A DNA stretch of 64,000 bases from positions 32,240,001 through 32,304,000 of the forward strand of contig OX638157.1 in NCBI GenBank assembly GCA_951804945.1, written 5' to 3'. Source of the stretch: Podarcis cretensis. Taxonomy: Eukaryota. The position numbers were made by a program, and so were the translations under genes. Below, one piece after another: positions 4,120-64,000 of the stretch. Positions within the stretch are counted from its first letter, which is position 1; the number at the start of each line of letters is the position of its first letter. The notes under the pieces were generated by a model. That model made no database searches. It had not been told where the DNA came from and saw nothing but the letters and a program-made list of their open reading frames with translations.

Positions 4120-4300
4120 CTTGTGATTGGGCGCTGCCGGGTCATGTGGCTTGAGAATGCATGCTTCTGATCCGGTTGGGGGAGGGGGACTCCATTGGCT
4201 CTTCCTGAGCAGTGGCAGTTAGAAGTGTTGCCTGGTGCTGGGGGATGCCACTTGGGGCTTCCATTTCCACCCAAACCCCTGTGCCCACCCAGTCGACAAC
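4120..4300 (+). promoter_or_regulatory. SLC25A31 proximal promoter: two inverted CCAAT boxes (ATTGG 4126-4130, 4194-4198) and a MYB/A-MYB-type site TGGCAGTTAG (4213-4222)
   Basis: Motifs read directly, in a locally GC/CpG-enriched segment upstream of the ATG. Function is inferred only. Confidence 0.5.
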
Positions 4301-7300
4301 ATGCTGGCCGCAGAGGGGCAGCAGTTTTTCGACCCTGTCTCTTTCGGGAAAGACCTCATGATAGGCGGGGTGGCAGCAGCTATTTCCAAGACGGCAGTAG
4401 CGCCCATTGAGCGCGTGAAACTGCTGCTGCAGGTCCAGGCCTCGTCCAAGCAGATCCGGGCTGACCAGCAGTACAAAGGCATGGTGGACTGTTTTGTGCG
4501 CATCCCTCGGGAGCAAGGTACGTCTTCCCCAAAGAATAGGCCCTCCTCGAAGGGTTGGCGGGGTGTGAGAGCCGCAAACGTTTGCCCCTTGTTTAAATCG
4601 TGCCTCAACTGTGAACAAAATAAGTGGCAATTCTGTGTTGTGTCAAGCCCCCTCACCAGCTGCAATAAGAGGCTAATAATTCTGGCCTACCTTTTGAGGT
4701 GGTTGTAAAGATTGTGGGGAAATGTGCTATTAAGTTCTCTGAATACCTAGCACAAAACAAATACTTATTACTAATACTCTGAATAGTTTGTGTGGGTGTG
4801 TTTTCTCCAAGGCAGTATTCTAGCTTTTACATTTTTCCAATCTTTCCTTAATGGCTGTGTGCTTCCAATGAGGCCTAACTTCCATATTCCTATATTGTTT
4901 TCATTCCGACCAAACAGTTGCACGCTCCAGAGTACATAGTGCATAATATCCTTTTTACGTCCTTCTCTCCCCCCCCCCCCCAATGATTGTACCTTCCTGG
5001 CTGCTTCCACCGCGCCAGGTTTCCCTAATTCATACTGACCTATCTACACATGCAAAATTAATACAACATGCTCACATTTCAGCTAACAGGGAATATATTC
5101 ACCCAGCAAGCAAGGATTTCTTCTGTAATATATACTCCTACTTCTCTAACCAACAGAAATACAAGACTCCCACTGCACCACACGTGCAGCCTGATCCTAG
5201 ATACGTCTGCTTGGAGCTAAGCCCCACCAAGTTCAGTGGGACTTATTCCCAGGTCATTGCATAGCATAGAAACTTAATTTGACTTCCTGGAATAATAGTT
5301 GAAGATCTCATAGGTGGTTATCTTTCTCCAAATAATTATTATAACATTGTACACTGACCTGTACCATGTATTTTTGTGCAGCTACTCTATTTATGCTGAA
5401 TTCTAAGGGTGTTTTGTACAAAGGTTTATATTTTTAAATTACAATTGTCAGTGTAAGCAGTTCTTTGTGTTTATGGATTCCACTACAGTGCTGATTTGAT
5501 TAGGAAAGTAGCAAATCTAAAACTACAAGTCCACTAAACAACTAGTTCCAAGTACCTCCATATACCTTTAATTCAATAGGCATGGCATCTGTTTCCTTGC
5601 TATGTGTATATAGTGTTAATGTGCACTAAATCTGTAGTTTAGCATGTCTTCAGTGTCTGTTTTACCAGCAAAATATTTAGCCTGGCTTATTTGGAGCCCA
5701 CATCATGAAACAAAGATTCTGAGCATTTTAGCTGCAGTTCTAAACCACTTTTATTAAGAAATGTTTTACTGAACTCCGCAGGACATACCAGACCAATCTG
5801 TGTAGAACTAGACTGCTAGTGTTTGGGTAGTAAGGTGAAATAGGACAATACAAATGTGTTATCCCTAAATGTGAAGTGAGCTTTTGGACCTAGTAAAGGA
5901 ATATGTATCTTGAAGATATTTCAAAACAATTGGCAGTTCTTACCATGGCTTGATGACTCTCAAACTGTGATACCTTTGTGCATTTAACTTGAAACATTTG
6001 GTTCCCGTTTTAGAGTTATTTTACATGATAGAAGATGTTCTTCTGAGAATGAATGCCTTCGTTGTCTTCGTTTAAACACTACAGATTGAAGGTTGTCATA
6101 TTAAATGTTGGGCGCAATCTAAAATTTGTTCTATAAGTTGAATGAAATATGGATTACCAACTGCTCAGACTTTTATTTTCCATGTCATTCAGTTACATAA
6201 CTTTAATAAAATATGAACACAAAAATGAACATAATTATCTACTATTCTTCATCAAATGTTGAAAGTATGCCCTTCATTTATGGTCTGCCAAGCTACTGAA
6301 TAAAACAGGAAACATGCCCTGCTTGCTCCTATTAGCAAAAACATTAGTTTTAACTTTCTTCATGACTATCTTTTGCACTCCTGTCTTGACAGCCACTGAT
6401 CTTGGAAGCAATACTTTCCTCATCACTTTAAATTTAAATACTTGGTCCTGCAGTGTAAGCCCTCTCCTTACAACTTGTACTGAACTGCAGTGGTCACAAC
6501 AGTAAAGATCTTTCATCGTACTGAATGTTTGCAGAAGCCTTGTTTTCCATCAGAATATATAGAGTGCCCGTTACTGATTGCCATTATTTACCTTGGTGCC
6601 TGCAATTGCAACACTTTCCCATCCTTTGACTACTTTTTGTCTTTTTGAACAGATCTTACTTGCATGTTAAACTCATTTTCCACGGATCTAAACTCATCCT
6701 GTAAAATTGCCCTCTTTGACCTAACCAAGATTCTCAGATCTTTCCAATAATTTTTCCTCCCTCCTCCTCCCTTCCAGTTAACTGGTGTCCACAAGCTTTC
6801 GTATTGTTTGGCTTCATGCTCCTTTTCAGCTCTCTTTACATTCCTGCAGTGAGACCTTGGCTTCTGGGGTCCTCAACATTTCCATTTGTCCCTTTGTTCA
6901 ACTTTTCCTGTTCTCAAATGCTGCTCTTTTTATGTGGTATTTCCTCTTGAAATACATATGTAGTTTAATTCAAGTCTGCCTATCTCCCTTTCTTTTGCCT
7001 CTTCAGATCTTCCTCAAAGCCTAGTTTTGCCTTCACTTTCCCCAGCTCTCAGCAAAACTCTTCCTCCAAAATAATTCCTTTTGTTGATCTAGTTTTCACT
7101 TAGTAAGGCACTAATACACTGCATGACCTGAGTCTTAGCAAGATCACCTGAGCCTGAAGAGCACAGTGGTCAGAATGTCTAAAATAATTTTTGTTGCATG
7201 CCTCCAATGTACTGCAAAACCAAGTCCACCACTCCTTATTAAAATGGGTTTAGCACCCCCTCTGGTGGTGAAAACATAACCTAAAAAACAGCTGTACAGT

Positions 7301-10300
7301 ACAGTACAGTACTATTTTACTAAGACTAGGTTGTATATTTGATGGCGATCAAACATACAGATTTAGCATGCTTTACCATCACATGGGTGGCACTGTGGGT
7401 TAAACCACAGAGCCTAGGACTTGCCGATCAGAAGGTTGGCGGTTCGAATCCCTGTGACGGGGTGAGCTCCCGTTGCTCGGTCCCAGCTCCTGCCAACCTA
7501 GCAGTTCGAAAGCGCGCCAAAGTGCAAGTAGATAAATAGGTACTGCTCCGGCGGGAAGGTAAACAGCATTTCCGTGCGCTGCTCTGGCTCAGCAGAAGCG
7601 GCTGGCCACATGACCCAGAAGCTCTACGCCGGCTCCCTTGGCCAATAAAGCAAGATGAGCACCGCAACCCCAGAGTCGGCCATGACTGGACCTAATGGTC
7701 AGGGGTCCCTTTACCTATACCTTTACCTTACCATCACAGTGTGCTTTCTATTTCCTGCTGTTTATTTGCTAACTCTGGCTCTTTAAAGGATTAATAGCAT
7801 CCAGCTTACTGCTATCGATGATCTGAGCTTCCGTTTTTTCCAGGGTTTGCATCTCTCTCTGCTTTTTAAAAAATCAGTACTGAGACAGTTGTACATAATT
7901 ATAGGGGAGCTAGATTTGAGGTGAAAGAATTGGATGACCACTACACATTGAACTCTTTATGGATTCACTTATATTCACTTATTCCACAAGTACCATTTCA
8001 AACATATTAATAGGTCCAAGTCCAGTACACAGAAACATGTAGTTATACAACAGAAACAATTTAAGATCATGTCAACTGTACATTTTTTAATCTTCTGTCT
8101 GTAGGATTTGCCAGCTTCTGGCGTGGCAATCTTGCCAATGTTATCCGGTACTTCCCAACTCAAGCCCTAAACTTTGCTTTTAAGGACAAATACAAGCAGA
8201 TTTTCATGGCTGGAGTGGATAAAGATAAACAGGTAAATGTGGTCTAACATTTTGTTTATTGCTGATGTGTCCAAAACCATTTTGCTTGGTCCAAACATGA
8301 AGAAATTGGGATATCCTTTTGAATTATTAATTATTAATAGTATACAGTATTATACAGTACAGAATTATTAATAGTATACAGTACATTTCAATAGGTGGTG
8401 TATTAAAGAGGCATTGGGATTTGTATTTAAGAAAAAAAGCTAATATGAGTAATTGCGTGAACAATATTAATGCCCATCATATGTGACAAGTGGGACTTGT
8501 AATAAAATGTTCAGGGTTACTACCAACTCTTTTCCAGGATACTTCATTCCTGCTCTCCTCCCTACAAGTAGGCCAGTGCCCCAAAGTTACTGTGCATAGT
8601 CCTCATTGGGATATTTTGGGGCTACATCTTAAGAGTTTTTACTGTGATTTTTGTTTTTGTACTTCTGCAAACCTTGGAGTTCACTGAAGCCTGCTGATAC
8701 CTCCTCTTGTTTGTGAATGGTGCTATTTGAGCAATGCAAGTCTGTACTCTGAAGAATGAGTTTATTGGTGTAGGATGTTTCTACTTGAAGCTCAGTATCA
8801 TGCTATTTACAAAGACATTCTTTATCTGAATTAGGCCTTAAAAGAAAAAAAAAGTCCAGCTGGTACTTTAAGCCAAAATGAAAAAAGCAATTGCTCTTGG
8901 TAAATGGAGCAAACAATCCTCTCACTGAATCCTGGAGCTCTCCAAACCTGTTCGACTTGACCAGTCGCATGGTATGCAGAGGCGTAAATCAGCAGTTTGG
9001 AAATGGTTTTCTGTTAATAGCACTGATGGCACTGACTGTTCCCCAGCTATGCGTTTTTTGATCTGTAAAGGTAGATGCATGTATTTTCAAAGGACACCAT
9101 CAGAGTGCAGAGCTGCCTCCTTCGAAAGGAATACTGAAAAGGCAGTCTTTAAGGGCAGGTTTACACATCACTGTTGCTCATCACTCTGTGACTGCAGCAT
9201 AACATGAAAATTTGTGCATGTGAAAGTGCCATTGCAAATCAAGCTCTATATTTAAAAAAAAAAGAAAAATCAGTGGATACAGTTCACACATTCAGCAACA
9301 GGACTAGTTCAGATATTTGTTTGGGCTGCTACCCCCCCCCAAAAAAAAAACCAAAAAAAAAACCACACTCATGCACAGTAATGTGTGAGGCCGTGATTTC
9401 AACATCAAAATGAAGTGTGAGGTGGCACTGCACTTTACACAGAATTTTTAGGCCCTGTTGTAGCTGTGGAAATTACTGCTGTCTGTTTCTGATTCATATC
9501 GTTCCCATATGCATGGGAGCATTTCTTATGGAGCAAAATAAATGTGTGAATTGATCCCAAGTGATGGGGATTTTGTGAATCAGCTTAAAGAGGGCACCCA
9601 ACCCTACTTGATCCGCTTCCCTGGCTATGCCTCCCCAGTTGTGATAGATACTTTAAACTGAGGTTTGGTAGGAACCTCAAGGTTTGCGACTTGGAGAGGC
9701 GATCCAGGAGTGCTCTGCCGGGAGTCACGTAGGATCGAGGGGGGTTCACACGGGCACGTTAAGGGCCCATTTGATGTGGAGAGCGGTCATTGTGAATCAT
9801 CCCTAGCATTCCACAGTTTGAGAAGGGGGTTCGAACAACATACAATCACCTCAGCAACACAAAAAGGCTGTTATATGCCATATAATATACTATATATGTA
9901 TTTTGGGGACATCTTTTATTGCTATGTAATCTTTGTTTGATACTGTCATGGGATTTTTAAGGGGATTTTTTTCTAACAAGCTGGTTCATTTTCTTTCCTG
10001 CCAATGCCTTCTGCATTGCCAGAAGCTTACTGTCTAAAGCACCTGGTACTATTTAATGCTTAATGACCATTTACACATACCCTGCATTTGGATTTAATAC
10101 CTTGCATTGCATGCTCATTTTCTGTCAGTATTACCGGTATATAAATTCATATATAAGCCATTTCAGTTTTAAAGCTCTGAAAGAACATGAAATACATCTT
10201 GACATACCTTGTGATATAAATGCTCCAAAGGGTAAAAGTCTTTTTGATTTTTTATATTATCATACTGTTGTATTTTCAAATAAATAGTTTCAACAATGTG

Positions 10301-10670
10301 TGTCTTGAATATTGAAGTTCCCATCTAGCTTAAGTTAGTTGTGTGTAATAACTCCCATTGAAACTGTAAAGTTGTAAATGCCAGTACCCAAAGATTCTGG
10401 GTCATATTTAACTAAGTTAAGGGTAGACCCGTTTAAATTAGGCCCATTAATTTTAATAGGTCTACTTCGATAAAACTCAGTTGACTACCACTCAACCTTC
10501 CCCCAAAATGTAAAGAAACCAAAAAAATCTTCTACTTCAAAACACAACCTTAACCTAGTTATTCAAAAATAACTTGTGGCACCATAAATACTAAATATTC
10601 TATTATGGCAGAAGCCTTTGTAGACCACAGTCTACTTCATCAGATACATGAAGTGTTAATCCTGAGTTAC

Positions 10671-10711
<41 letters not shown>

Positions 10712-13700
10712 TTAAAAATTTTATTTATATCCCGCCCTCCCCAGCCAAAGCCGGGCTCAGGGTGGCTAACAACAATAAAATAGTGCAACATTATAAAAAC
10801 AATTCATTATAAATGTGTGTATAAATAGATACACACACACATGGGGAAGGGGAGAAGGTAAACAATGTGGTCACAGGTAAATGAAATGCAGTAAGTACAG
10901 TGACAGTGATAATTGCATAATTTAATTTGGTCATTCATACAACAGTTGAGGGTTACACAGACATCCTGGCGTTGGTAAACCAATTATCATGAGTGTAATA
11001 ATTTTTAAAAAACAACTTTATCCTGCTTCAAACTACAGGTTTGAGACTACACTGAACCTCTTGATGAATTATAATTCACTGGTTTCATCTTTCTGCCTCC
11101 GTTTGAAGTTCCTTTGTTACTCAATTTTCATGGCATAATTTGTGTTGGGATGGATTTTGTGAAAGAGCCTCAGGTTGTCTAAAATTTGTTTTACACACAA
11201 GCCAAGTTTCACCACCAAGTCTTGAGTTTGGTGTGCCCTTTGCAATGCAAGTTGTGGATTTTCTCATGGGAATTTGCAAGAGGAAACTCCATCTTGAATT
11301 CCCTCAACTAAAATGTTGCCGTCAAATCTAAGTTCCATAGGACACTGTTGATTTGCTTATATTCAAGCATCACCTTGGGAATGTAAAAAATACAGTAATT
11401 TCAGGCTTGTGTCATCGCACCATTGTTTCAGGTATTTGTAAAAATAAAATAAAATTGAGGATTGTTACAAACCCTGTTTTTGAACTCAGCAGTTTTTCCT
11501 TTTCAGTTCGGGAGGTGGTTTGTTTCAAATCTGGCTTCTGGTGGAGCAGCTGGAGCAACTTCATTGTGTGTGGTATATCCATTAGACTTTGCACGGACCC
11601 GGTTAGGTGCTGACATTGGAAAAGGTAAGAGCTTCATCTTCATATTTTAAGGGTTATGCGCTGAGACTAGCAGTTTGTGTTCCTGCCTTCTTTGTGGTGG
11701 TGCCACAGTTTATGGAGCTCCCTTCCTAGAAATATGGATTTGTTCCCTCCATTACCATCATTTTGATGTAACCTGGGGGGGGGGGGGATTTCAACCCAAC
11801 TGTTTAGTATGTGATGGGTAGTTGGTTTTCAGCAGCTGAAAATTGTTGTATTTATTTTGAAAAATGTTTTTCATGATATTTTACCTGTTGTATGGCTCCT
11901 TATATGGCTCCCTGGGCTCCTTTGTGAAGAAGGACAGGATAAAAAAATGAATTAATAGTAATAGTTCCCCTGTTCATTGTGGGGAATGCTTAGAGCTAAA
12001 GTGCTCCCCTAGTTTTGTTATTTCTTCTTTCATTTTAGGTATGGAAGAGCGACAGTTCAAAGGCCTCGCTGACTGTATTGGTAAAATTGCAAAAAAAGAT
12101 GGCATTACCGGCCTATATCAAGGATTTGGTGTTTCAGTACAGGGGATCATTGTATATCGGGCATCCTATTTTGGATGTTACGACACCATAAAAGTAAGTT
12201 TTCTCATCAAACTCACCCTTTCCCATTTAAAAAAAGGATTATTTGTCACCTTTATTATGGATGCATTTTACAGTATTTATCCTATCAGTTAAGATATTAT
12301 TAATCCTATTGCAGAAACAGAGACCTAAGACTTAAAGATAAAAAGACATGCCCAATTTGGTTTGTATTCCTTTAGTTTGTTATTATTTTATAAATTTAAT
12401 AAATCTACTACATGATCCGGAGGAGCTCTGTGGTTACCTAATGGTCGATGATAACACTTGTTTTACAGCGAATTATTTCTACACATTTATTCATCCCAAT
12501 TTGCTAATTGGTTCCTGAAGCCCAAAGGTCTGATGCAATATGATGCTCCTTTGCTCACAATGGCTGCCCTGTTGATTTAAAAGGAGAAAGCAAGTTGACT
12601 GTTAAATTGGGCAGCCCTTACGATCAAGATCTCAGTGTATTCATTGGACATGGGGATGCTCATATGTACGGATAAAACATTTTATACTATTTAGTTAATT
12701 AATGTGACTCACAGATGAATCCTGTGCATTTTTATTTAGAAGTAAATCTCTTGTGATTTCCTGCTACAGAAACAGCTTTTAAGCTCTAAGGAATGCTAAC
12801 CAGGCTCCTGGACAGTCTCGTTCGGACTGCGAGAGATCTTGCAGGAGCCTCCCAGAGCCCGCGTGAGACTTTCCCAAAGCCCAGTAAGCAAGTCTGAGAG
12901 CCTAAAAGCTCTCTGTCTTGTGTGTCTTTAATTTGTGTGATATCAGCTGGCCAGCTGCAAAGCGTGTAAAGCTGCAATCGCATAAGTTAAATGTGCTTAA
13001 GTTGCAATCTTAATATATGTTATTTGCTTCCTCCCCCCAAAAAATCATTTGGCTTGTTTGCCATATGTAAAGCGTAAAATAAAAGGAGAAAAGAATGTTT
13101 CCAGTTACACTGACCATGTAAAATAATCCATTCAAAATACAATGCACTTAGGAAATTCTGAACCAATATAATGATTTGACAGCATCTGCTTTTCCATTTA
13201 GATTCTCAAGATACCCCAGTGAATTCTTATTTCTCTTTTCTCTTCTTAGGGAATGTTGCCAAATCCAAAAGAAACACCATTTGTCGTATCTTTTGCAATA
13301 GCTCAAGCTGTGACTGTATTTTCTGGCATACTGTCATACCCCTTTGACACTGTCAGAAGACGCATGATGATGCAGGTAAACGACATATACTTGCTAGTGT
13401 CTAAGCATGGGAGGCCTATCTAGAAGGGCAACTGGGGTAGAGTCCGGGGGGGGGGGATTCTAGGAGGGGAAATATTAAAAATTTCAAAGCTACACTCTTC
13501 TCCTGTCCCCCACTGACATCCTTCAATTTGCATTTGCAGAGGCTCCTGCAGCTATTTTTATCAATCAGCTAATTGCACAGCATAGCATATCACATATAAC
13601 AGGTGCTATCACCAGGACCCTCTCAGGTGGGGAGGGGAAGCATTTCCCTGGGTATGTGGACCCTACATTTTGACCACAGATTTGTGTGGTTGCCCAGCTG

Positions 13701-14892
13701 GCTAGTCAGAAACATGTATTTGCCTGTTGATGTGCTGAGCAAACCAGGTGATTTTCCTTTTTCATGATTTAATTTCAAAGCAACAGTGTGTGTGTGTGTG
13801 TGTTAAGAGAAATACATTTATTTTTATTCTTTTCCTGTTGGGAGTAAGGGGGCAGTAACCACCCTGTTGTTGCCCTGTGGTGCTCTGTCGTGTGCTTTCT
13901 TGAAGGTCTGCTGTGTATTTCAACAATGTGGGTCTGCCTGACAGCTGTTTTATTTGCAAAAAGAAAAACAACTTATGTAATTTTATGTAATCTTCCTTCT
14001 GGATTTTTTTTTTCAACATTAGAGACTTTTGAAAAGGAAGTATGCCAATTTGGAAGTGAGAGAAATTAATTTTTTATATCTTACAGATTTATATGGAATA
14101 CTATTTGACTGTCTCAATATAAATATCTATCTTAAAAAATAGATTAAGAAAATTAAATTCTCCAGTGTAAACATTTTGATGCAAACACATTTTTTAAAAT
14201 ATCTATCAAAAAAACCATACTACCAACTTTGGGGAAATCTAAACACTTCTAGATTGGTACTTGTCGATGTTGGTGATGGGGGTGGGGAACCATGTGAAGT
14301 TCAACGAAAAGGCAGTGAAGAACAATGTTCCAAAAATATGCTTCAGACATTATCCAAGAATCAGCATGCTTCAAAACACCCTGAGGAATGACATGACCTT
14401 GTTTAACTCTGAAGCTTAAAGAAACATCACAAGAAGATCACAGACTTGCTAAATTTAGCTGCAGAGAACTACATCAGGGAAGCATTTACTCATTAAGGTT
14501 CTTATATTGAAACAGAGATAAAATTAGTGAGAGGTGTTTCTAGACTTATAATTACAAAAATGCCTAATACTATATATCAGACCCTAGACTGAAAATTATA
14601 AAAATACCAAATGCCAGATTAGTCCCTTGCCACATAGTAAGCATGTACGTTTTCCAAACATCTGTCTTTGTTTAAAATTATTTTAACACAGAGTGGAGAG
14701 GCTGAACGTCAGTACAAAGGAACCATTGACTGCTTTTTCAAGATATACAACCAGGAAGGATTAAATGCCTTTTTTCGGGGAGCCTTTTCAAATGTACTTC
14801 GTGGGACAGGCGGTGCCTTGGTGTTGGTCCTATATGACAAAATTAAGGAGTTTCTTAATATTGATCCATCAATAGGCCGATCATCTGACTAA
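4301..14892 (+). CDS. SLC25A31: ADP/ATP translocase 4 (ANT4), complete, 314 aa: join(4301..4517,8105..8232,11507..11624,12039..12193,13250..13375,14692..14892)
   Basis: Exons sum to 945 nt, all GT-AG, phases consistent. Motifs [65 protein letters not shown], and the ANT signature [10 protein letters not shown]. The six-exon layout, RWF (not RYF) and position between INTU and HSPA4L indicate ANT4 rather than ANT1-3. Confidence 0.97.
7384..7727 (+). mobile_element. Sauria SINE (tRNA-derived) in SLC25A31 intron 1
   Basis: B-box GGTTCGAATCC, (ACCTTT)-type tail, 11-bp TSD TTACCATCACA (7373-7383, 7728-7738). Confidence 0.9.
10571..10668 (-). mobile_element. Penelope-like element terminal fragment with decayed hammerhead core (also 58190-58245 and 63764-63856)
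   Basis: Three related copies of ACTTCATCAGAT(A/G)CATGA; the minus strand reads CTGATGA-helix II-(GAAA), followed in two copies by an AATAAA-like/TTAGT/GG(T/C)GCCACAA segment. Confidence 0.6.
10671..10785. repeat. (AAT)n microsatellite adjacent to a reverse L2-type tail
   Basis: About 13 AAT units (10671-10710), then TTTATTTATATCCCGCCCT..GGGCTCAGGGTGGCTAACA. Confidence 0.8.
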
Positions 14893-23933: not shown

Positions 23934-23953
23934 TTTCCAGATCTTTCTCGAAC
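23934..23953. promoter_or_regulatory. Heat shock element (HSF binding site)
   Basis: tTTCcaGATctTTCtcGAAc = four alternating nGAAn units with one mismatch, about 290 bp upstream of the ATG of a heat-shock gene. Confidence 0.75.
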
Positions 23954-24103
23954 TCGGGGAGGCTTGCCGGAGAGCCTGTGCGGAAAGAGCCGAATGCCGC
24001 AGCCGGAGTTTCGCGGCGTCCCCGCTTGGCGGCCTCTGGCGCGCGTGGGCGCGCGTGCGCAGAGGCGAGGAAGTGCCGGTTGGTGGCTGTTGCTCCGCAG
24101 TGA

Positions 24104-50468
<26,365 letters not shown>

Positions 50469-56428: not shown

Positions 56429-56476
56429 TATTTAAATCTACTTCTTGAACCAGAAGTGATGTTCCCCTGAGACTTT

Positions 56477-56482
56477 TTTATT
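56477..56482 (-). terminator. Candidate poly(A) signal of the WD40 gene (AATAAA on minus strand)
   Basis: TTTATT about 230 bp downstream of the stop codon at 56714. Confidence 0.6.
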
Positions 56483-56713
56483 GTCACTAGTTTCAGCTTA
56501 ATCTGCTACTGTAATACAATAATTGTTCTAACCAATGGGATTAATGTCCACGAAGAGGACTGATCTCTTAACAGCCATCAAAGTTCTTTGGTCAGAAAAA
56601 AACACATCAGCACACTTTATAAATTCTGCTTGCTTTTTACACATCATACATTTGAGAAAAGTTGCTTGGTTGCTTAAAGGCTGCCTCTGCCCTGCAACCT
56701 GTCCAAGAAGCTG

Positions 56714-57878
56714 TTAAATTTCCAACTGAAATGGGTCGTCAAGTTCTGCTGCTAGATTTGGTTTGTGGAAGGCAAGCTGTGTGTCAGCTAACTCACACAG
56801 TGGAAGAGAGCGATAAGAATTCATTCGGTTTGCATCATGTTGAATAGGTTTCCACTGGAACTGCTTTGATCTGAAAGATAAATGGTGTGCTGGTTTCTTT
56901 CTGGCTAGTAGTTGTAAGAAGGATACTTTTCCAAATGATACAAAATTAAGACTTCTTCCTTAAATTTTGGAAATTAGGTGAGGGAATAGGGAGAGAATAG
57001 ATTATTTGGATAGCTAGGAGTCTGCAGATCACTTCCAATAATTTCTGGGAAACTACTAACAAGGCACACAAAGGGAATGGTAGATGCAAAAAGCAGTTTT
57101 TTGAAATACATGTTGCTACTGTATCAAACACACAGACTGCGCACTTGAGTCTGTCAACAGAATTTAATTTCAGTTGTCCTGTGTCTTTTATAAAGTGCAG
57201 CATTCTATTACGCCATGCAAGACTCGCATATCTGTTAAGTTAACCTAGTATGGGCCAGTATGTTGTCGGTGAATAAAGAGGATTTAAATCCAAGTTGTAC
57301 ACACCTGTGTAGTCTGTCTATCTGCCTTTGCTTCAATTCTTCAGCAAGTTCATCATCTGTTACCATCTTTGAAGTGCAAGTGTCCCAAATCATCTATGGG
57401 ATAACATACCACTCATTTAGGCTGGGCAGAGAAGTGCCCTCAAAGTACACAGGGGGCAATGATTTCCCAGAAAATAAAGTTTTTTGGTGAAACAGCAACT
57501 ATAATTACAAGGCTTTCCCAGAAGGAAGAAAGAGCTTGTGGGGTGAGTTGGTGACACAATTGTGCAGTATAATTTTAGCTTCGAAGCAAAGGGTGATAGC
57601 AGTAGGACTGAGAAAGGGTAATAAAATGGTTGCAAGGTAGTAAATTACTTTCTATAAAACATATATTACAGATCAAATGTTATTTTTTTGTTCCGAAAGT
57701 AACAAAGTATTGTGTATAATGTGTTTAGCCATTATGTTTGGTATATTAAAAGAACAGGGTTTTTTAGACAATTTCAAATCAAATTTACTTTTTATTTTTA
57801 TTTTGTTACAAAGAACTAGAAGCTGCTGGAGCAGGAAAAAAAAGTAGCAAAACCAGGATAAGCCAACATAATAGTTTT

Positions 57879-57927
<49 letters not shown>

Positions 57928-60900
57928 TGAAAATTATGCTGTTTTCCAGTCCCTCCATGTGTCAAGCAGGCATAAAGCATTCATTTCCATAAAAAGAGCT
58001 GAGAAGAATGCAGAGGACCAATACAGTACTCAATGAACACTACATTAAATTTTATCCCATTTTCTGATTCTTCATATTTTTCATTATACTGATCAGAGAC
58101 TTACAAAAATTGCAGATCTGCCCAGATTGAAAAAGCTATGTAGCTTCACATCTCAAGAGCTATTGAGCTTGGGGATGGGGGGTATACTGTTGAGTATTTC
58201 ATGGGCTGCAGGCCACTTCATCAGATACATGAAATGTTATCCTTATCAGGAATATAATATACCTGGTTTGGGGACAGGAGCTAGTTGGCAATGAAGCCAA
58301 ATGCTAATGAAAAGACAAGACAATGGGAGATACTCAGCTACCTTAATTTTTAATCATAGTAGACCTTTCGAAATTAATGGACCTAGCTTAGTCATGCTCA
58401 TTAATTTCAATGTGTCTGGTCTAAATAAAACTGAAATACTGCCCAGTGATGATAATATTCCTACCTCAGCATCCATCTTGGATTTCTTCAGTGTGTCAAA
58501 GGTTCTTGTAGATTCTTGTCCAAAAGAGTCAGAGGTAGTTGCTGAACTCGGGTTGGATTCTGATAGTCCCCATGATGACTTCTCTTTTATGTTCCATGGT
58601 TCTCTTTGACCAAATGTACCTTTTTTTAAAAAAGTAAAGTTACTTTAAAATGCTATACTTGACTACCTCAGAATCTTCTCTGTTATGCATATATTCAATT
58701 TTTACTTGCATGTAGACAAAGGACTATATCCAACCAAGTTGTCCTGTTAGATAAAAACATCTGCCTGCGCAATGAAATGTCTGCTCCCTGCCTCCCCCAA
58801 CCAATCTGCTCCAAAGGGTTGGAGAAAACCACAGGACAGATTTGGGAGGACAACAGGAGAGTAAAGGAAGAAGTCCCATTGTGCAGATGGAAGACCTGCT
58901 AACTGAATAACTTGATTGGATACAACCCAAAATAAAGCTTTCAAAAAACCCAAACCACTGTTACAGTCCTGGGGAATGAACAACCACATAAGAACATAAC
59001 AAGAGCTTGCAAGATCAGTCCAATGGCCCACCTAGACCAGCATCCTGTTCGCATAGTGGACACCTATGAGCATGCCTGTGGGAGACCTGCAAGCCAGACC
59101 CGAGCACAAGAGCAATCTCCAGCCCTATGCTTTCCAGCGACGTGTGCAAAAGCATTACTGCCTCAACCGTGGAGGAGAAGCAGTAGCCATCATGGTTAGT
59201 AGCAATTGATAGACTTCTGCTCCGTGATGATGCGGTGGTGATGGTTCCGTTCCAGATGCAATCAGAGAAAGTTTGATGTGGCAAAAACAGGATCGGGGTA
59301 TGTGGGTTGCAGACAGATCATGCAGTGTGTGTATAGTTAATCAGTTTGTGCGTGCAACACCTCCTTATTCCTGGGTCCAACAAGTGTTAAAATGTAAGCC
59401 AGGCTAGCTTTGTGAAGAGGTAGTTGCCTGGGTGATGGGCCATTAAGAGAACATAGGATTAAGGGGGCTCTGTGCAATACAGCAAATAGGTAGGGCCCCT
59501 CCCTCAACTCACAGATAGAACGCCAAAAGCCAGAGTTTAGAGTTGAGTTTGGTTGTGTTGTGACCGAGAAGAAAAGCAGAAAGACAGAGCACGATGTTTG
59601 ATTTCTGTTTGAATTCAAGGCTGCTGCTATGGAGGAAACAATACTCTCTTGGGTTGTTGATGCTGTGAACCCCTCCACTGTAGGCTTAAGTTGTATATAT
59701 GTGTAAATAAACCATATATCAAAGAAACCACAGCTTCCACTGTACCTCATTACCAAAAGGAAACATGAACCCTGGATAAGCGCCTGGAATCTCACACTGC
59801 TGGGTGATTGGAGTGGTGTGTAACAATGTATATGTATTTCCATGTAAAATTAAATCTTACCTATATATTCCCCTTTTAGGCTCCACAACTTTGCATTATA
59901 GTCTAAAGAAGTAGTGAGGAGAAGCTGGTGCTCATTCATAAGGCTGATGCTACTCCATTGGAAAAAGAAAATGGGTTTAGTTTGTTATATTGACAACTGC
60001 TCTGAAAATAGGCACTGCTGTGGAATTTCCTTACTCTCTTAAACATCTTGTTTCTCAAGTTTTTTCCACAGCTAGAATGGCAATACTCGTAGAACTCCTC
60101 AATGCCAAGCCATACCCACATGCCCAACAACCGACATCATATATGATGTTACGTGTGGGGCAAATAAAGATGCAGTTGAGCCAAAAGGGGGTTTGTACAA
60201 AGCCCTGTACATAGTGCCATACACAATACTTTGCCAGCGCAGACAACTGTCTGATGCTCGGGACTTGCAAAGCACAGTGCTGATTGTTGTGGCTTGCAAG
60301 GCACCCTGCATGGTGCTAGGGAAAAACAGTCACCTAATGACATTGTGGTGTCATGTGCCTTTCAAATGTTGTTGTGATGTTGTGTGCCTTTCAAAGTTGG
60401 CTCACGGGGATGGGGCGGGGGGAGATAAGCACCCAATCCACTGGCTGAATCCAGCTCCCCACTGCTCTTCTACAGGGTCTGTGCTTTCTTACCCAAGCAG
60501 ACAATGCAGGCAAAAGAGCTACACTGCAGCAGTTCCTCCTGCCACCACCAGTGCACCATGAGAAGGGGGCCTAAGACGTATGTAAAGGGAGCTTGTTCCG
60601 AATGGATTTGCCAGCTCCTAATCTTTCCGCAGAGGCCTTTTGTTTCTCAGCGTGTCTTACCAGGTTATGCTGCAGTTGTGAGTGTTCCAGCTGTGAAGTA
60701 CTATTTGAAAAGAAGGAGGAGGGGAGACTAAGGTAAGGACATACTGTACACTTGGGAGCAAATATGAAACATTTGGGTTTTGAATAAAAATGTTTCTCTT
60801 ACAAACTGGTGGCTTGGCTTCTGGGCCATTAATGGCATATTCTGCAATGTTCCAGATATAGAGAAAGCCCAGCTGGTCTCCTGCACACAAGAGGAAGTCC

Positions 60901-63412
60901 TTGTCATCAACTGCCACGTCACTGACTGTGGATCTCGACTGCAAGCAAGGAAAAATAAATAAAATAAATAACAATCGTGTATGCTGGATTGCAGAAGCTT
61001 CAATACTGTACTAAAGTTGTGGCGGAAATGCATTATTTTATTTTTACTCTCAAGAGGGAGGACTAACAGCATAATTCTGTGATGATGTTCTCAGAAATAA
61101 ATTCAACCAAGTTCAATGGAACTCACTCCCAGCCCTGCCTAGAAGGGTGTGTTGGATTGAAGCTTCCTTGCACTCTAAGGAGCACTTCGTTACTTGTGTC
61201 ACTTTTGGTGAATGATTAGTTTTGCATTTCAGTTGGTGCATGTGGTGAGATTTTAAGTGCAATTTCGGCACACACAGGCAAGAAGTGCCTACATTTAAGG
61301 TTGCCCTTAAGTCAAGCAAACATGTGAAATGCATGTATCCAGCCCAACTATCAATAGGCTATTGTTTACTCTTTATTTTGATTGCACATTATGTTACATA
61401 TTGGGTTGATTCTAATGTAATACCAACCCATGGTTTTGCGCTATGTAAACAGGGTTGTTCGAGGGGATAGGGTTGTGCATGCCCCATACTCTGTATCTCC
61501 TAAAGTAACCTGTTGCCCTCAGGGAGGGATACCACTGAGAGTCAGCTCTCAGTCTATCTAGCGTCTGTATGTGGAAGCAGCAGGGTGGCATCTTGTCCTT
61601 TGTCTCTGATCGCAAAATGCCCTGGGCTAGCACTGTCTCTGGGTTCACCTTGATGCTTAGACTACCATCCTATGAAAAGTCAGAAGAGGATACAGGCAAA
61701 TCCCTAATGCACAGAGCAATCCTATGCATATTTACACAGAGGCTGACCCTACTGCATGCAACGGGGCTTACTCCCCCAGTAAGTGTAGCTAGCAGGGGAA
61801 GGGAACCTATGACATTCCAGATGTTACTGGACTCCAGCATGGACGGTGGTCCGCACAGATAGGAGTTGTGGTCTAGCAACATCTGGAGGACCACTACCTA
61901 CCTAGCCTTGCTGTTTAGGATTGCAACCTAAATGAATGTGTGCCACTTCCAGTTATGACTTATTTAAAGATCTAGTTCTTATTTTGTTTGTTTCCAAACT
62001 GTTAGGAATCTCACAGCACTAATAAAAACATACAGAGGCCTTACAAATGGAAATTAGCAACATATAAAACATTTTTCCAGAAAATGAGCAGCACTTACAC
62101 TAGAGAAATAAGCAAAAAGTCTCCCACGGCCATATATATTCCAGAATGCAATATAACCTGGGAGAATAACAGCAAGCACGGTATCAATAACAGTATCACA
62201 AAGATGAAAATGAGATTTTCTGCATTCCCCCCTTAAAGTAGAAGTCTGCCCTGTGGTTGGGGGTGGGGTGGTGAGTGTTGGTTTTCTGCTAGAAACTCTG
62301 AAACCTGATTTTTTTCTCTGTACTGATATGTTCATTCTCACCCTACAATGGTCACACAATAGGCTCTATACTAAGACTCTTCAGAAAGCTTCTACAGAGT
62401 AACATCCTCCCACAAATCTAGGTACTGTCGCAAGGCCTAAAGCCTCTTCCCAATATGCAGTTGGCACAAGGAAGAAATTTTGAGTTGCCTTTCTTAAGAA
62501 AGGATCTCCCTTGCTAAAACACCTGTTTGATCTGAGTGCTTCTTTCAACAGCACTAATCTTAAGAGGCATTGCCTCTTAAGTGTCAATGGTTGAACAACA
62601 TCCTCTTAATAATATTTTGTATTTGGGTATCACTCTCAGGTGCTTCAAAGTGCTTCCTGTGCATTAGCTAACTGTCATCCTTACAGTAACCATGTAAATC
62701 AGGATTATTCTCTCCCATATTGCAAATGGGGGGACTAAAGGAGAGAGGGAGAGACTCTTACCTAAAGCCATTGAGTTAATGGCGGAGGTGAGCTTTGGAC
62801 TGGGGGCTCCACCTGATTCGTAGCTCAGTCTCTTGGCCACAGTGCTACACCATCAAAGTCACAAGTGCTGCAACTTACGACAGCCTCAGGTGCCATCGGG
62901 GTGTTTCCCCCCACCTCCCTGCCATGCTTGCCTGATATATGGATTGGGAGGAAAGCTCTAATGGCTGCAATGGGAGTTTTTTTTCTCCCAATAACAATAG
63001 TCGGATCACATCCACACCAACATTTAAAATGCTTTGTTTCTCCTAAAGAATCCCAGGAACTTTAGTTTGTTATGGGTGCTGGGAATTATAGCTCTGTGAG
63101 GAGTAAACTGCAGTTCCCAGATTTCAGGGGGTGGGGAAGCAATGTTCTTTAAATGTATGGTGTGAGGAATGCAGCAAGGTTGAAGTCCCCAGCCTCCCAA
63201 ACCACCTTTCACACAATTGATAGTTGTATGAATGGTGTCCTGCCTAGCCTGGCCCTGAAACACCCTTTGGAATGCAGCCCCTTGCACTGCATTGGCAGCT
63301 ATTTTGAAGGGTTCCCCAATCACTGAGCAGGTTTTTGGTGAGCACCTGGAGCCGTGAGAAGAATATGGGATCTGAGCATATGTAGGCCTCTGAACCCCAA
63401 CCCCACTCTATC

Positions 63413-63467
<55 letters not shown>

Positions 63468-63580
63468 ATCTATCTTACTTTTATCTTTACCTCTAGGTCC
63501 ACTAGCCACTAACATTGCAGCTGTTTTCTTCTTTTCCAGCCTTGATAAGAGGAAAATGATTTTATTGATGGTTAAATCCT
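56714..63580 (-). CDS. WD40-repeat protein of the WDR95/WDR49 family, C-terminal ~270 aa (5' part beyond window): complement(join(56714..56870,57305..57393,58465..58619,59861..59949,60661..60700,60803..60938,62099..62157,63491..63580))
   Basis: Eight exons with GT-AG ends and matching phases (1,0,1,2,1,0,2) give an uninterrupted peptide: DLTINKIIFLLSRLEKKKTAAMLVASGPRGYIAFWNIYGRGRLFAYFSSSRSTVSDVAVDDKDFLLCAGDQLGFLYIWNIAEYAINGPEAKPPVLLHSWNTHNCSITCISLMNEHQLLLTTSLDYNAKLWSLKGEYIGTFGQREPWNI...DDELAEELKQRQ...FHKPNLAAELDDPFQLEI*. Three WD blades plus the 'G.YIGTFGQ..PW' motif I recall from this family. Confidence 0.88.
57882..57926. repeat. (TA)n microsatellite
   Basis: Direct reading. Confidence 0.95.
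58987..59227 (-). mobile_element. CR1 3' UTR fragment
   Basis: CATAAGAACATAA tail and body similar to 26728-26890 (CCAGCATCCTGTTC, AGCCATCATGG.TAG.AGC.ATTGATAG). Confidence 0.7.
59228..59825 (+). mobile_element. Probable solo LTR in an intron of the WD40 gene
   Basis: About 600 bp, TG...TGTAACA ends, internal AATAAA (59706), abuts a truncated CR1. No clean TSD found. Confidence 0.4.
62635..62852 (-). mobile_element. CORE-SINE / MIR-like remnant
   Basis: ATCCTTACAGTAACCATGTAA...ATTATT.TC.CCCATATTGCAAATGGGGGGACT.A.G resembles the reverse MIR core. Confidence 0.5.
63407..63475. repeat. (TCTA)n / GATA microsatellite just after a WD40-gene donor site
   Basis: Direct reading. Confidence 0.95.
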
Positions 63581-64000
63581 CTGGGAGGGGACAAAAAGAA
63601 CCATGAAAGCATTTCCAGCACAATCCAGCACAAAGTATTTCCACAATCTCACACCAGCACAGGATATTTGTCAGCAATGCATTTCACTGTTGCAATCTGT
63701 AAAGCCAAGCCCAGCTCGCCCAGGTACAGTGGGAGACTCCACAAGACACTTCCTCTCACACACAGGTTTGTGGCGCCATCAAAACTAGCAAATTTATTAC
63801 TGAATAAGTTCTTGTGGGCAACAGGCCACTTCATCAGATGCATGAGGTGTTATCCGCAATTGATGGCACAGGTACATATACCTGCAGGTACACAGAGGCT
63901 GGCAATTGGGTGACATTTCCATTGTGTGGACTCTGCGCTCCTACAATAAACTCTCACAGGAAGCACCCTCAGTCCAGGCTTGAGATGGTGCACATCTAAC

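What the first reader, a model, noticed from the sequence alone, without database searches (positions are those of the whole stretch)
56714..63580. Hidden WDR95/WDR49-family gene tail-to-tail with HSPA4L: a likely second copy of the HSP110-WDR95 pair
Seen: eight small minus-strand exons splice in phase into an intact ~270-aa WD40 C-terminus; the ORF track shows only fragments. Recalled knowledge: mouse Wdr95 lies tail-to-tail with Hsph1 (the HSPA4L paralogue), human has WDR95P there, and the next coding gene after human HSPA4L is PLK4. Inference: this gene is a whole-genome-duplication paralogue of Wdr95, kept intact in lizards and apparently lost at the human locus. It would be a poorly characterised WD40 protein, plausibly ciliary or sperm-related, in a block with INTU, ANT4 and HSPA4L.
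Basis: partly seen in the sequence, partly recalled or inferred. Interest (0 to 1): 0.78.

Follow-up and report, generated by a model that had tools for sequence, protein, structure and literature searches.

The report
Unnamed WDR95-like gene beside HSPA4L
The eight small exons are the real, spliced 3' end of a cilia/sperm-tail type WD40 gene that lies next to HSPA4L in lizards, is a separate ancient sister copy of WDR95, and already exists as automatic gene models in public databases.

Summary
Eight minus-strand exons (63580-56714) have AG/GT borders, fit in phase and give 271 codons plus a stop. They match residues 588-860 of RefSeq XP_028599198.2, "CFAP337-like", of Podarcis muralis. Identity is 258 of 265 residues to the Podarcis lilfordi protein. 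Spliced contigs from three related organisms show all six introns that were laid. So the gene is not hidden: related lizards carry 857-860-aa models of it.

A maximum-likelihood tree puts it in clade X (100/100): sharks, sturgeon, bowfin, coelacanth, lungfish, amphibians, turtles and some squamates. Clade Y is separate (100/100) and holds the rodent proteins named Wdr95. Lacertids have both copies. No mammal, bird, crocodilian or teleost is among the 57 X rows.

The neighbours are the INTU last exon, a six-exon ADP/ATP carrier and an HSP110 gene. That is the published INTU-ANT4-HSPA4L order.

Function is inferred: an axonemal protein of the WDR64/CFAP337 type.

The parts
63491..63580 (-). Exon E1 seen in the window (90 nt). 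It starts 2 bases into a codon. The peptide begins DLTINK and matches P. muralis residues 588-618.
   Evidence: AG acceptor with 17 of 20 pyrimidines and a GTAAAG donor. tblastn 100% over 31 aa, E 1.8e-12.
62099..62157 (-). Exon E2 (59 nt), a WD40 strand region (YIAFWNIYGRG...).
   Evidence: AG/GT borders, donor GTAAGT. 19 of 19 residues match P0002. Joint 60936>62099/62100 in X15 and X17.
60803..60938 (-). Exon E3 (136 nt), a WD40 blade (…LGFLYIWNI…). The window lacks 2 codons at its start that relatives have; the difference is in frame.
   Evidence: phmmer of this exon: 206 hits at E<=0.001. 8-9 extra letters at the joint in the contigs of X15 and X17 (table 5c).
60661..60700 (-). Exon E4 (40 nt).
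   Evidence: AG/GT borders. 12 of 12 residues match P0195, P0299 and P0302. Joint 60700>60803 in X15 and X18.
59861..59949 (-). Exon E5 (89 nt), a WD40 blade (…DYNAKLWSL…). The junction codon is TGC (Cys) here and Ser in the related proteins P0002 and P0195.
   Evidence: Joint reported as 59951>60663 in X15 and X18. I read the 2-nt shift as relatives having AG where the window has TG (inference).
58465..58619 (-). Exon E6 (155 nt): end of the propeller and start of the low-complexity tail.
   Evidence: tblastn E 4e-26. Joints 57393>58465 (X15, X17) and 58616>59858 with cut +3 (X15, X17, X18).
57305..57393 (-). Exon E7 (89 nt), an acidic helix (DDELAEELKQRQ).
   Evidence: Helix 792-807 in the model of P0195. 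Joint 56870>57305 in X15 and X17. An unspliced contig in X20 and the P. raffonei model P0002 both read through this donor.
56714..56870 (-). Exon E8 coding part (157 nt including the TAA stop at 56716-56714), with the conserved C-terminal motif (…HKPNLAAELDDPFQLEI).
   Evidence: tblastn 98% over 52 aa, E 1.6e-27. Contig X15 record 1 ends at 56873, at the acceptor.
56440..56713 (-). 3' UTR. At least this much is covered by the same contig as E8. It probably runs on to about 54.9 kb.
   Evidence: X15 record 1 (2036 nt) covers 56440-56873 and has 1602 more letters beyond the laid stretch. Minus-strand AATAAA at 56482 and 54967, ATTAAA at 54953. The far end is inferred.
24236..50468 (+). Neighbour: HSP110-family gene, read as HSPA4L. 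Its stop lies 6.2 kb from the WD gene's stop, tail to tail.
   Evidence: Pfam HSP70 on 4 of 5 frames tested. Best PDB match is the human HSPH1 ATPase domain at 131.9 bits, against SSE1 at 74 and HSP70 at 52. The HSPA4L identity rests on the neighbours and on PMC3155547, not on a paralogue-level test.
4340..14860 (+). Neighbour: ADP/ATP carrier gene with six coding exons (ANT4/SLC25A31 type).
   Evidence: PDB 1okc E 8.9e-25. Pfam Mito_carr on 2 of 2 frames. Six carrier-like frames read. Coordinates are approximate.
2669..2809 (+). Neighbour: last exon of INTU.
   Evidence: PDB 7q3d_B 'Protein inturned', residues 924-964 of 964, E 8.3e-14.

Best explanation
The stretch holds the last eight exons and the 3' UTR of a real protein-coding gene on the minus strand. 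The exons encode 271 aa, about the last third of the protein.

Its orthologues in Podarcis muralis and Zootoca are 860-aa automatic RefSeq models named 'CFAP337-like' or 'WDR49-like'; P. lilfordi carries GenBank models of 857-921 aa named 'WDR64-like'. The protein is a tandem beta-propeller. The window encodes about the last three blades of the second propeller. It also encodes a roughly 110-residue tail predicted to be disordered, with one acidic helix and a conserved C-terminal motif.

The gene belongs to a vertebrate clade, here called X. X is distinct from the WDR95 clade, here called Y. Among the sequences I could fetch, Y is X's closest relative. X proteins are about 200 aa shorter at the N-terminus, and no EF-hand pair was found in them. 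Lacertid Y has one.

In this lizard the gene lies tail to tail with the HSP110 gene of the INTU-ANT4-HSPA4L block. WDR95P lies beside HSPH1 in human. The simplest history is therefore that an HSP110 + WD gene pair was duplicated together before gnathostomes diverged, most likely in the 2R genome duplications. X was then lost in several lineages, mammals included.

Mechanism (inferred by homology, not shown): like bovine WDR64 and Tetrahymena CFAP337, the protein probably docks on the CCDC96/CCDC113 coiled coil on the surface of axonemal doublet microtubules. There it would contact CFAP57 and an inner dynein arm in sperm flagella and/or motile cilia.

The confidence given (0.8) is for the gene being real, spliced, of clade X and distinct from WDR95. 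The 2R-twin history alone I put near 0.6, and the docking site near 0.5.
For: - Gene model: AG/GT borders and phases fit, with no internal stop.
- Orthology to lacertid models: colinear tblastn over residues 585-857 and 588-860. Per-exon identity is 258/265 (P. lilfordi), 253/265 (P. muralis) and 246/265 (Zootoca), against 74/265 to the lacertids' own Y proteins.
- Splicing: joints for 6 of 6 laid introns. Five are seen in 2 of 4 runs and one in 3 of 4 runs, from three organisms.
- Clades: FastTree of 66 rows has X 100* and Y 100*. The careful IQ-TREE of 46 rows x 1001 columns has X 100/100, Y 100/100 and invertebrates 100/100 apart.
- Y is WDR95: the hamster cluster holds 'Wdr95 [Phodopus roborovskii]' and 'WD40 repeat domain 95 [Cricetulus griseus]'.
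- Both copies in one species: P. lilfordi, Zootoca, Eublepharis, Paroedura, Varanus, Gopherus flavomarginatus, X. tropicalis, Ambystoma, Rhinatrema, Protopterus, Latimeria.
- Range of X: 0 of 57 X rows among the 120 listed are from a mammal, bird, crocodilian, snake, iguanian or teleost.
- Locus: plus PMC3155547 for the INTU-ANT4-HSPA4L-PLK4 order in human and anole, and PMC7890067 for WDR95P beside HSPH1.
- Family and fold: the best PDB sequence match is 9fqr_No, WDR64, at 144 bits. 8tid_Z (Tetrahymena) scores 70.6 bits. Foldseek ranks 1 and 2 are the same two chains, E 3.5e-38 and 7e-31.
- AF2 model of P0195: mean pLDDT 75.7; residues 591-740 lie in blocks of 85-94; residues 749-860 are below 50.
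- EF-hand: EF-hand_7 is found in lacertid Y (E 9.1e-10). It is not among the 25 best families shown for P0195 or P0152. PF13499 is not in the precomputed Pfam lists (some cut short) of the X rows.
- Family function: WDR64 sits atop CCDC96/113 (PMC11779644). CFAP337 binds CCDC96 and the stem of dynein d (PMC10504270). FAP337 depends on FAP57 (PMC6761771).
Against: - The window ends at 64000, so about 587 upstream codons of this individual's gene were never seen.
- The runs with spliced contigs are only guessed to be RNA, and they come from other organisms (G, H, I). The two small 'RNA?' runs of the window's own organism label hold next to none of the words.
- X20 shows an unspliced contig across intron 7.
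- True WDR49/CFAP337 and EFCAB8 sequences were never obtained. 'Closest relative is WDR95' therefore holds only for what was in the tree. WDR64 is known only through one PDB score.
- UniProt names a Gopherus agassizii X fragment 'WD repeat domain 49'.
- The HSP110 gene was not tested at paralogue level.
- The lamprey sequence joins Y with only 87/75 support, so the timing relative to cyclostomes is open.
- Of 10 exon differences listed for E7 and E8 in two runs, 6 change the residue. That gives no sign of strong constraint on the tail, and the sample is too small to judge.
- Mouse Wdr95 knock-out males are fertile (PMC13253961), so family members can be dispensable.
Confidence: 0.8

Rival explanations
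1. Clade X is the orthologue of mammalian WDR49/CFAP337. It stayed beside HSPA4L in fishes, amphibians and reptiles and moved (or evolved very fast) in mammals and birds. It would then be no extra family member.
For: UniProt/Ensembl names a Gopherus agassizii X fragment 'WD repeat domain 49'. RefSeq names for X rows waver between WDR49-like, WDR64-like and CFAP337-like. No true WDR49 sequence was in any tree, so this was never tested directly.
Against: No mammalian or avian protein is among the 57 X rows, although invertebrate homologues at 651-725 bits were listed. A true orthologue should score above the shark X protein at 864 bits. Recent RefSeq annotations call both X and Y 'CFAP337-like' in the same species, for example Paroedura, Mixophyes and Macrochelys. 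That hints at a third gene holding the plain name; this is an inference from naming habits. WDR64, said to be the sperm paralogue of WDR49 (PMC11779644), is equally far from X, Y and amphioxus: 144, 140 and 143 bits.
Confidence: 0.1
2. X and WDR95 arose by a local or segmental duplication of an HSP110 + WD block, or by independent moves next to HSP110 genes, and not by whole-genome duplication.
For: The tree only dates the split to between the amphioxus divergence and the gnathostome radiation. Pairing with an HSP110 gene was seen once for X (this window) and read once for Y (PMC7890067). An alligator model fuses Y with TEX26, which places Y near that gene only.
Against: HSPA4L and HSPH1 lie on different human chromosomes, 4q28.1 and 13q12.3 (PMC3155547, PMC7890067). 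Both WD clades span sharks to tetrapods with species-like branching, the usual pattern of 2R twins. That these two regions belong to one 2R paralogy group is recalled, not tested.
Confidence: 0.15
3. In this individual the gene is a decaying or non-functional copy. Only the 3' exons look intact.
For: Upstream exons lie outside the window. Lacerta agilis and P. raffonei RefSeq models are fragments of 139, 453 and 217 aa. The window has a private 2-codon deletion and a Ser>Cys junction codon. Six of 10 listed exon differences change the residue.
Against: Eight of 8 exons are intact with good splice sites. Full 857-860-aa models exist in three close relatives. Identity to P. lilfordi is 97%. Spliced contigs exist in three related organisms. 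The private changes are in frame.
Confidence: 0.05

Closest known systems
RefSeq XP_028599198.2, 'cilia- and flagella-associated protein 337-like' of Podarcis muralis (also Zootoca XP_034967908, P. lilfordi CAI5784388)
   Same: The same gene in sister species. It is colinear with all eight exons at 93-97% identity, including the identical C-terminal ending.
   Different: These are automatic models named by similarity only. The window's species differs by 7-19 of 265 residues, a 2-codon deletion and one junction codon.
WDR95 (mouse/hamster Wdr95; human pseudogene WDR95P beside HSPH1)
   Same: Closest vertebrate clade among those tested. Tandem WD40 propellers. Lies next to an HSP110-family gene (PMC7890067). 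Testis-enriched in mouse (PMC13253961).
   Different: A separate clade at 100/100 support. Only 74 of 265 identical residues to the lacertid WDR95 in the window-encoded part. Lacertid WDR95 is about 1080 aa with an EF-hand pair; X is about 860 aa and none was found. X sits beside HSPA4L, not HSPH1.
WDR64 (bovine sperm axoneme, PDB 9FQR chain No)
   Same: Best PDB match by sequence (144 bits) and by fold (Foldseek E 3.5e-38). Two-propeller architecture. Gives the likely docking site on CCDC96/113 (PMC11779644).
   Different: Distant: 19% identity in the Foldseek alignment. Equally far from X, Y and the amphioxus homologue. 1082 aa.
CFAP337 / FAP337 (Tetrahymena 8TID chain Z; Chlamydomonas)
   Same: Second-best fold match (E 7e-31, TM 0.46). 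Two WD40 propellers (PMC10504270).
   Different: A protist EF-hand protein, 70.6 bits. It carries a C-terminal helical bundle, whereas the X tail is predicted to be mostly disordered.
WDR49 (human CFAP337) and EFCAB8
   Same: Same family according to PMC6761771 (table passage read).
   Different: Not tested. No sequence of either could be fetched with the capped searches.

Membership tests
CFAP337 / WDR49-WDR64-WDR95-EFCAB8 family of axonemal WD40 proteins | Full-length sequence homology to named members | tested here: met
   The Xenopus X protein finds WDR95-clade and invertebrate CFAP337-like proteins at 651-768 bits. P0195 finds bovine WDR64 at E 4.8e-41 and Tetrahymena 8tid_Z at E 7.3e-19.
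CFAP337 / WDR49-WDR64-WDR95-EFCAB8 family of axonemal WD40 proteins | Two consecutive WD40 beta-propellers | tested here: met
   Shown on the orthologue P0195, not on a joined window peptide: Pfam WD40 E 4.8e-38, AF2 strands over residues 9-729, Foldseek top hits 9fqr_No and 8tid_Z. The window encodes residues 588-860.
CFAP337 / WDR49-WDR64-WDR95-EFCAB8 family of axonemal WD40 proteins | N-terminal EF-hand pair (common in the family; also not listed for hamster Wdr95, so not strictly defining) | tested here: not met
   No EF-hand family is among the 25 best of 37 Pfam families for P0195 or the 25 best of 33 for P0152. Lacertid WDR95 P0347 has EF-hand_7 at E 9.1e-10. PF13499 is not in the precomputed lists (some cut short) of the X rows. 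The families beyond the best 25 were not shown.
CFAP337 / WDR49-WDR64-WDR95-EFCAB8 family of axonemal WD40 proteins | Sits on the CCDC96/CCDC113 coiled coil of doublet microtubules | not testable with these tools
   Known for WDR64 (PMC11779644) and CFAP337 (PMC10504270). Only inferred here.
WDR95 orthologue group | Nests in the clade that holds rodent Wdr95 | tested here: not met
   X and Y are each 100/100 in the careful tree. The Y cluster carries the Wdr95 names.
WDR95 orthologue group | Lies beside HSPH1 | tested here: not met
   The adjoining HSP110 gene is flanked by a six-exon ANT and the INTU last exon. This is the HSPA4L block of PMC3155547. Paralogue identity of the HSP110 gene is by synteny only.
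WDR49 (human CFAP337) orthologue group | Nests with mammalian WDR49 in a gene tree | not tested
   No WDR49 sequence was obtained. There is only indirect evidence against.
2R ohnologue pair (X with WDR95, alongside HSPA4L with HSPH1) | Duplication node after the amphioxus split and before the gnathostome radiation | tested here: met
   Vertebrate X + Y + lamprey are separated from six invertebrate sequences at 100/100. Both clades run from sharks to tetrapods.
2R ohnologue pair (X with WDR95, alongside HSPA4L with HSPH1) | Paralogous neighbours conserved around both copies in several species | tested here: inconclusive
Pseudogene | Frameshift, premature stop or broken splice site | tested here: not met
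   None in 8 of 8 exons. Upstream exons are outside the window.

The most novel reading that the evidence does not exclude
Clade X is a fifth, so far unnamed vertebrate member of the CFAP337/WDR49/WDR64/WDR95/EFCAB8 family. It would be the EF-hand-less 2R twin of WDR95, duplicated together with its HSP110 neighbour (HSPA4L with X, HSPH1 with WDR95). It would be kept from sharks to turtles, geckos and lacertids, and lost independently in mammals, archosaurs, teleosts and perhaps snakes and iguanians. It would give sperm or ciliary axonemes of those animals an extra docking protein on CCDC96/113.
Probability: 0.55. Interest if true: 0.4.

Novelty: new member of a known kind. Interest (0 to 1): 0.3.

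Why it matters
For annotation, this is an ordinary gene that public pipelines already model in sister species.

The modest added value is evolutionary and in naming. The databases call these proteins WDR49-like, WDR64-like, CFAP337-like or WDY-like at random. The tree shows one coherent, ancient clade distinct from WDR95.

If the paired duplication with HSP110 genes holds, three things follow:
- It is a tidy 2R example.
- It explains why mammals have no gene reported between HSPA4L and PLK4.
- It flags a candidate axonemal protein that frogs, turtles and lizards have and mammals lack. This bears on comparative work on sperm axoneme composition.

In the held library I found no paper on this paralogue.

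Tried and rejected
- Pfam on seven raw open frames and PDB sequence searches on two frames gave nothing significant. Short exon pieces were not diagnostic alone.
- I considered that E1 might extend upstream, because its frame stays open to 63683 and vaguely resembles a WD blade. I rejected this. The P. muralis protein has a different preceding sequence. The acceptor at 63582-63581 has 17 of 20 pyrimidines. Only the fragmentary Lacerta agilis model P0001 reads through that stretch.
- I considered the donor at 60807 and the acceptors at 59952 or 59902. They were rejected on phase, on the match to P0002/P0195 and on the contig joints.
- One long exon 60938-60661 (open in one frame) was rejected for the same reasons.
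- Fetching true WDR49, WDR64 and EFCAB8: the two full-length searches list only the best 120 rows. These were filled by clades X, Y and invertebrate homologues. No family member was among the other hits.
- The third search, with turtle fragment P0037, gave 6 proteins among 220 candidates: 3 named turtle proteins and 3 unnamed.
- The protein atlas gave only generic WD40 clusters and no ids.
- Paralogue-level naming of the HSP110 gene was not possible. The PDB holds only HSPH1, and one C-terminal exon found nothing.
- Earlier scan notes: nothing for this place and nothing relevant by words.
- A crude count of exon differences is too small to speak of selection.
- Supplementary files of the papers were not opened. 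The tables of PMC11779644 and the figures of PMC13253961 may bear on WDR49/WDR64 and Wdr95.

Full report
WHAT IS THERE

The window is vertebrate DNA with no N. On the minus strand between 63580 and 56714 the ORF lists show only short open frames, some with WD40-like strings. Taken alone these frames prove nothing. None of 7 reached a Pfam cut-off. Two of 2 gave nothing significant against PDB sequences.

One candidate exon (60938-60804, 45 aa) was searched against 1.84 billion representative proteins. It gave 206 hits at E<=0.001, and 11 at E<=1e-10. The two best are 98% identical. They are named 'WD repeat-containing protein 49-like [Lacerta agilis]' and 'WD repeat-containing protein on Y chromosome-like [Podarcis raffonei]'. 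Further single-stretch hits at 50-65% identity come from Varanus, a turtle, frogs, coelacanth and sturgeon.

Laying these proteins on the window by tblastn fixed eight colinear exons:
- E1 63580-63491
- E2 62157-62099
- E3 60938-60803
- E4 60700-60661
- E5 59949-59861
- E6 58619-58465
- E7 57393-57305
- E8 56870-56714

All 8 acceptors are AG and all 7 internal donors are GT. The carried bases close every split codon. The sum is 271 codons and a stop, with no internal stop. Exons were handled one by one, and database orthologues served as stand-ins.

THE GENE IS ALREADY MODELLED

A full-length search with the Xenopus relative found 248 proteins at E<=1e-10 among 6121 candidates, of which the best 120 are listed. 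It brought in XP_028599198.2 of Podarcis muralis (860 aa, 'CFAP337-like').

The 90% cluster of that protein also holds an 860-aa Zootoca vivipara model, 857-921-aa P. lilfordi models, and fragments from Lacerta agilis. The window exons match residues 588-860 of the P. muralis protein and 585-857 of the P. lilfordi protein. Nothing in the window matches residues 1-587. The window thus holds the last third of the gene, and the rest lies beyond position 64000.

Exon by exon, the identities are:
- P. lilfordi: 258 of 265 whole-codon residues
- P. muralis: 253 of 265
- Zootoca: 246 of 265

The source is therefore a lacertid close to Podarcis. Relative to these relatives the window lacks two codons at the start of E3 and has Cys for Ser at the E4/E5 junction codon. 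Both changes are in frame.

EXPRESSION AND SPLICING

Twenty listed runs hold at least part of 56400-63600. Four runs of 'organism A' hold 78-97% of its sampled words. Six small runs guessed to be RNA hold 5-9%, about the share that the exons make up.

Contigs of four of these runs (X15, X17, X18, X20; four coded organisms) were laid on 56440-62200. They show joints at the following places:
- 56870>57305 (X15, X17)
- 57393>58465 (X15, X17)
- 58616>59858, equally placed 3 bases on (X15, X17, X18)
- 59951>60663 (X15, X18)
- 60700>60803 (X15, X18)
- 60936>62099/62100, with 8-9 extra letters (X15, X17)

These are the six introns between E2 and E8.
- The 2-base shift at E4/E5 fits relatives having AG where the window has TG.
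- The extra letters at E2/E3 fit the two codons that the window lacks.
- One 592-nt contig of X15 strings E2 to E7 together.

Points against, or limits:
- X20 shows no joint. It shows one contig running unspliced from the 3' UTR through intron 7 to 57293. This echoes the P. raffonei RefSeq model, which reads through the E7 donor.
- The runs are contigs, only guessed to be RNA, of other organisms and of unknown tissue.
- The two small 'RNA?' runs labelled with the window's own organism hold next to nothing.
- Intron E1/E2 lay outside the 6000-letter limit.

A 2036-nt X15 contig ends at the E8 acceptor and runs on below 56440. With minus-strand poly(A) signals at 54967 and 54953, this suggests a 3' UTR of about 1.8 kb. 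That is an inference.

WHICH FAMILY MEMBER

Best BLASTP against reference sequences sorted the 291 fetched family sequences into 84 X-type, 179 Y-type and 28 others.

Of the 120 rows, 57 are X. By their source names they are frogs, salamanders, caecilians, a lungfish, turtles, geckos, a cordylid, a lacertid, a sturgeon, a bowfin, sharks and a coelacanth. None of the 57 is a mammal, bird, crocodilian, snake, iguanian or teleost.

Clade Y runs from chimaera and sharks to mammals. The hamster cluster in it holds 'Wdr95 [Phodopus roborovskii]' and 'WD40 repeat domain 95 [Cricetulus griseus]'. No primate is among the 120 rows listed for the hamster query. This fits the statement that Wdr95 lacks a human orthologue (PMC13253961, passages read).

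Lacertids have Y as well: P. lilfordi P0347 (1080 aa) and Zootoca P0379. The window's exons share only 74 of 265 residues with them.

Trees:
- FastTree of 66 rows: X 100*, Y 100*.
- IQ-TREE LG+C20 PMSF of 46 full-length rows x 1001 columns: the quick tree gave X 100* and Y 99*. The careful tree gave X 100/100 and Y 100/100. The six invertebrate sequences stand apart at 100/100, and lamprey joins Y at only 87/75.

Fragments were left out of the 46-row tree. The 66-row tree included six rows with under half of the columns filled.

Limit: true WDR49/CFAP337 and EFCAB8 never came within the 120 rows shown. WDR64 is known to me only as PDB chain 9fqr_No. That chain scores 144, 140 and 143 bits against X, Y and amphioxus. 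It is thus equally far from all three, and far below the 651+ bits between X, Y and invertebrate homologues.

So X is not WDR95, and WDR95 is its nearest relative among what I could test. That X equals WDR49 is unlikely but not excluded. UniProt names one Gopherus agassizii X fragment 'WD repeat domain 49'.

THE LOCUS

On the plus strand the window holds three neighbours:
- The last exon of INTU at 2669-2809. It matches residues 924-964 of 964 of PDB 'Protein inturned', E 8.3e-14.
- An ADP/ATP carrier gene with six carrier-like coding frames between 4.3 and 14.9 kb.
- An HSP110-type gene from about 24236 to the stop at 50466-50468. Pfam HSP70 hits 4 of 5 frames. The best PDB match is human HSPH1 at 131.9 bits, against yeast SSE1 at 74 and HSP70 at 52.

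The order INTU-ANT4-HSPA4L-PLK4-MFSD8 is published for human and anole (PMC3155547, passages read). I therefore read the HSP110 gene as HSPA4L, by synteny and not by a paralogue-level test.

For the other pair, a GWAS table places a SNP 'intergenic' between WDR95P and HSPH1 at human 13q12.3 (PMC7890067, passage read). An alligator model fuses the Y gene with TEX26. That TEX26 lies at 13q12.3 is recalled.

HOW IT LIKELY WORKS

Shown on the orthologue P0195:
- Strong WD40/propeller Pfam matches.
- An AlphaFold2 model with beta strands from residue 9 to 729. Mean pLDDT is 75.7, and residues 591-740 lie in blocks of 85-94.
- A tail, residues 749-860, below pLDDT 50 with one helix at 792-807.

The window thus encodes about the last three blades of the second propeller and the tail. 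The tail's last residues are conserved across X.

Foldseek ranks bovine WDR64 (9fqr_No, E 3.5e-38) and Tetrahymena 8tid_Z (E 7e-31) first and second. They stand ahead of generic double propellers.

No EF-hand was found in X. Lacertid Y has one.

Inferred from papers (passages read):
- WDR64 sits atop the CCDC96/CCDC113 coiled coil of sperm doublet microtubules and touches CFAP57, CFAP58 and CFAP299 (PMC11779644).
- Tetrahymena CFAP337 binds CCDC96 and the stem of inner dynein d (PMC10504270).
- Chlamydomonas FAP337 is reduced when FAP57 is missing (PMC6761771).

I therefore expect X to be an axonemal surface protein at that site, in sperm or motile cilia. The tissue is unknown. Mouse Wdr95 knock-out males are fertile (PMC13253961), so the function may be subtle.

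VERDICT

It overstates 'hidden', since the gene is modelled in RefSeq for sister species. WGD origin, loss in mammals and the WDR49 question remain untested.

I found no paper on this paralogue or on the paired duplication in the held library. Of PMC11462348 I saw only the search listing. Supplementary files were not opened.

Interest is modest: an ordinary, already modelled gene with a tidy evolutionary footnote.

Noticed in passing
window 2669-2809 (+): Last exon of INTU. It matches the C-terminal 41 residues of PDB 'Protein inturned' at E 8.3e-14, so the window starts inside or just after INTU.
   Followed up: yes
window 4223-14889 (+): ADP/ATP carrier gene spread over six coding frames, the ANT4/SLC25A31-type structure. 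Exact exon borders were not worked out.
   Followed up: partly
window 23700-24700: The only GC-rich patch of the window (GC 0.50 in 24001-26000). It lies around the first coding exon of the HSP110 gene (start near 24236) and is a likely CpG-island promoter.
   Followed up: no
window 56871-57304 (intron 7 of the WD gene): A deep contig of run X20 runs unspliced from the 3' UTR through this intron to 57293. The P. raffonei RefSeq model also reads through the E7 donor. This may be a retained-intron or alternative 3' end form.
   Followed up: partly
window 60936-60940 and 59949/60661: Private in-frame changes of this genome against relatives: two codons missing at the start of E3, and a TGC (Cys) junction codon where the related proteins P0002 and P0195 have Ser.
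   Followed up: partly
window 58370-58412, 58949-59141, 59528-59721, 61844-62036: Short intronic patches with very high summed contig depth and many loose ends in all four runs. These are probably transcribed interspersed repeats and not part of the gene.
   Followed up: no
window 805-1041 and 28330-28560; also 7330-7690, 32440-32800, 40365-40655: Open frames at these places translate to nearly the same strings, so two families of interspersed repeats recur in the window. They were seen only in ORF listings.
   Followed up: no
window 57882-57926 and 63407-63475: Simple repeats inside introns of the WD gene: (AT)22 and about 18 copies of TCTA.
   Followed up: no
protein lists: Among squamates, clade X rows come from geckos, lacertids, a cordylid and Varanus. 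No snake, anole or Sceloporus is among them, though these appear in clade Y. This may mean further losses or gaps in annotation.
   Followed up: no
cluster of P0219: Two older alligator GenBank models named 'testis-expressed sequence 26 protein' fall in the WDR95-clade cluster. This suggests a TEX26-WDR95 gene-model fusion and hence that the two genes are adjacent.
   Followed up: no
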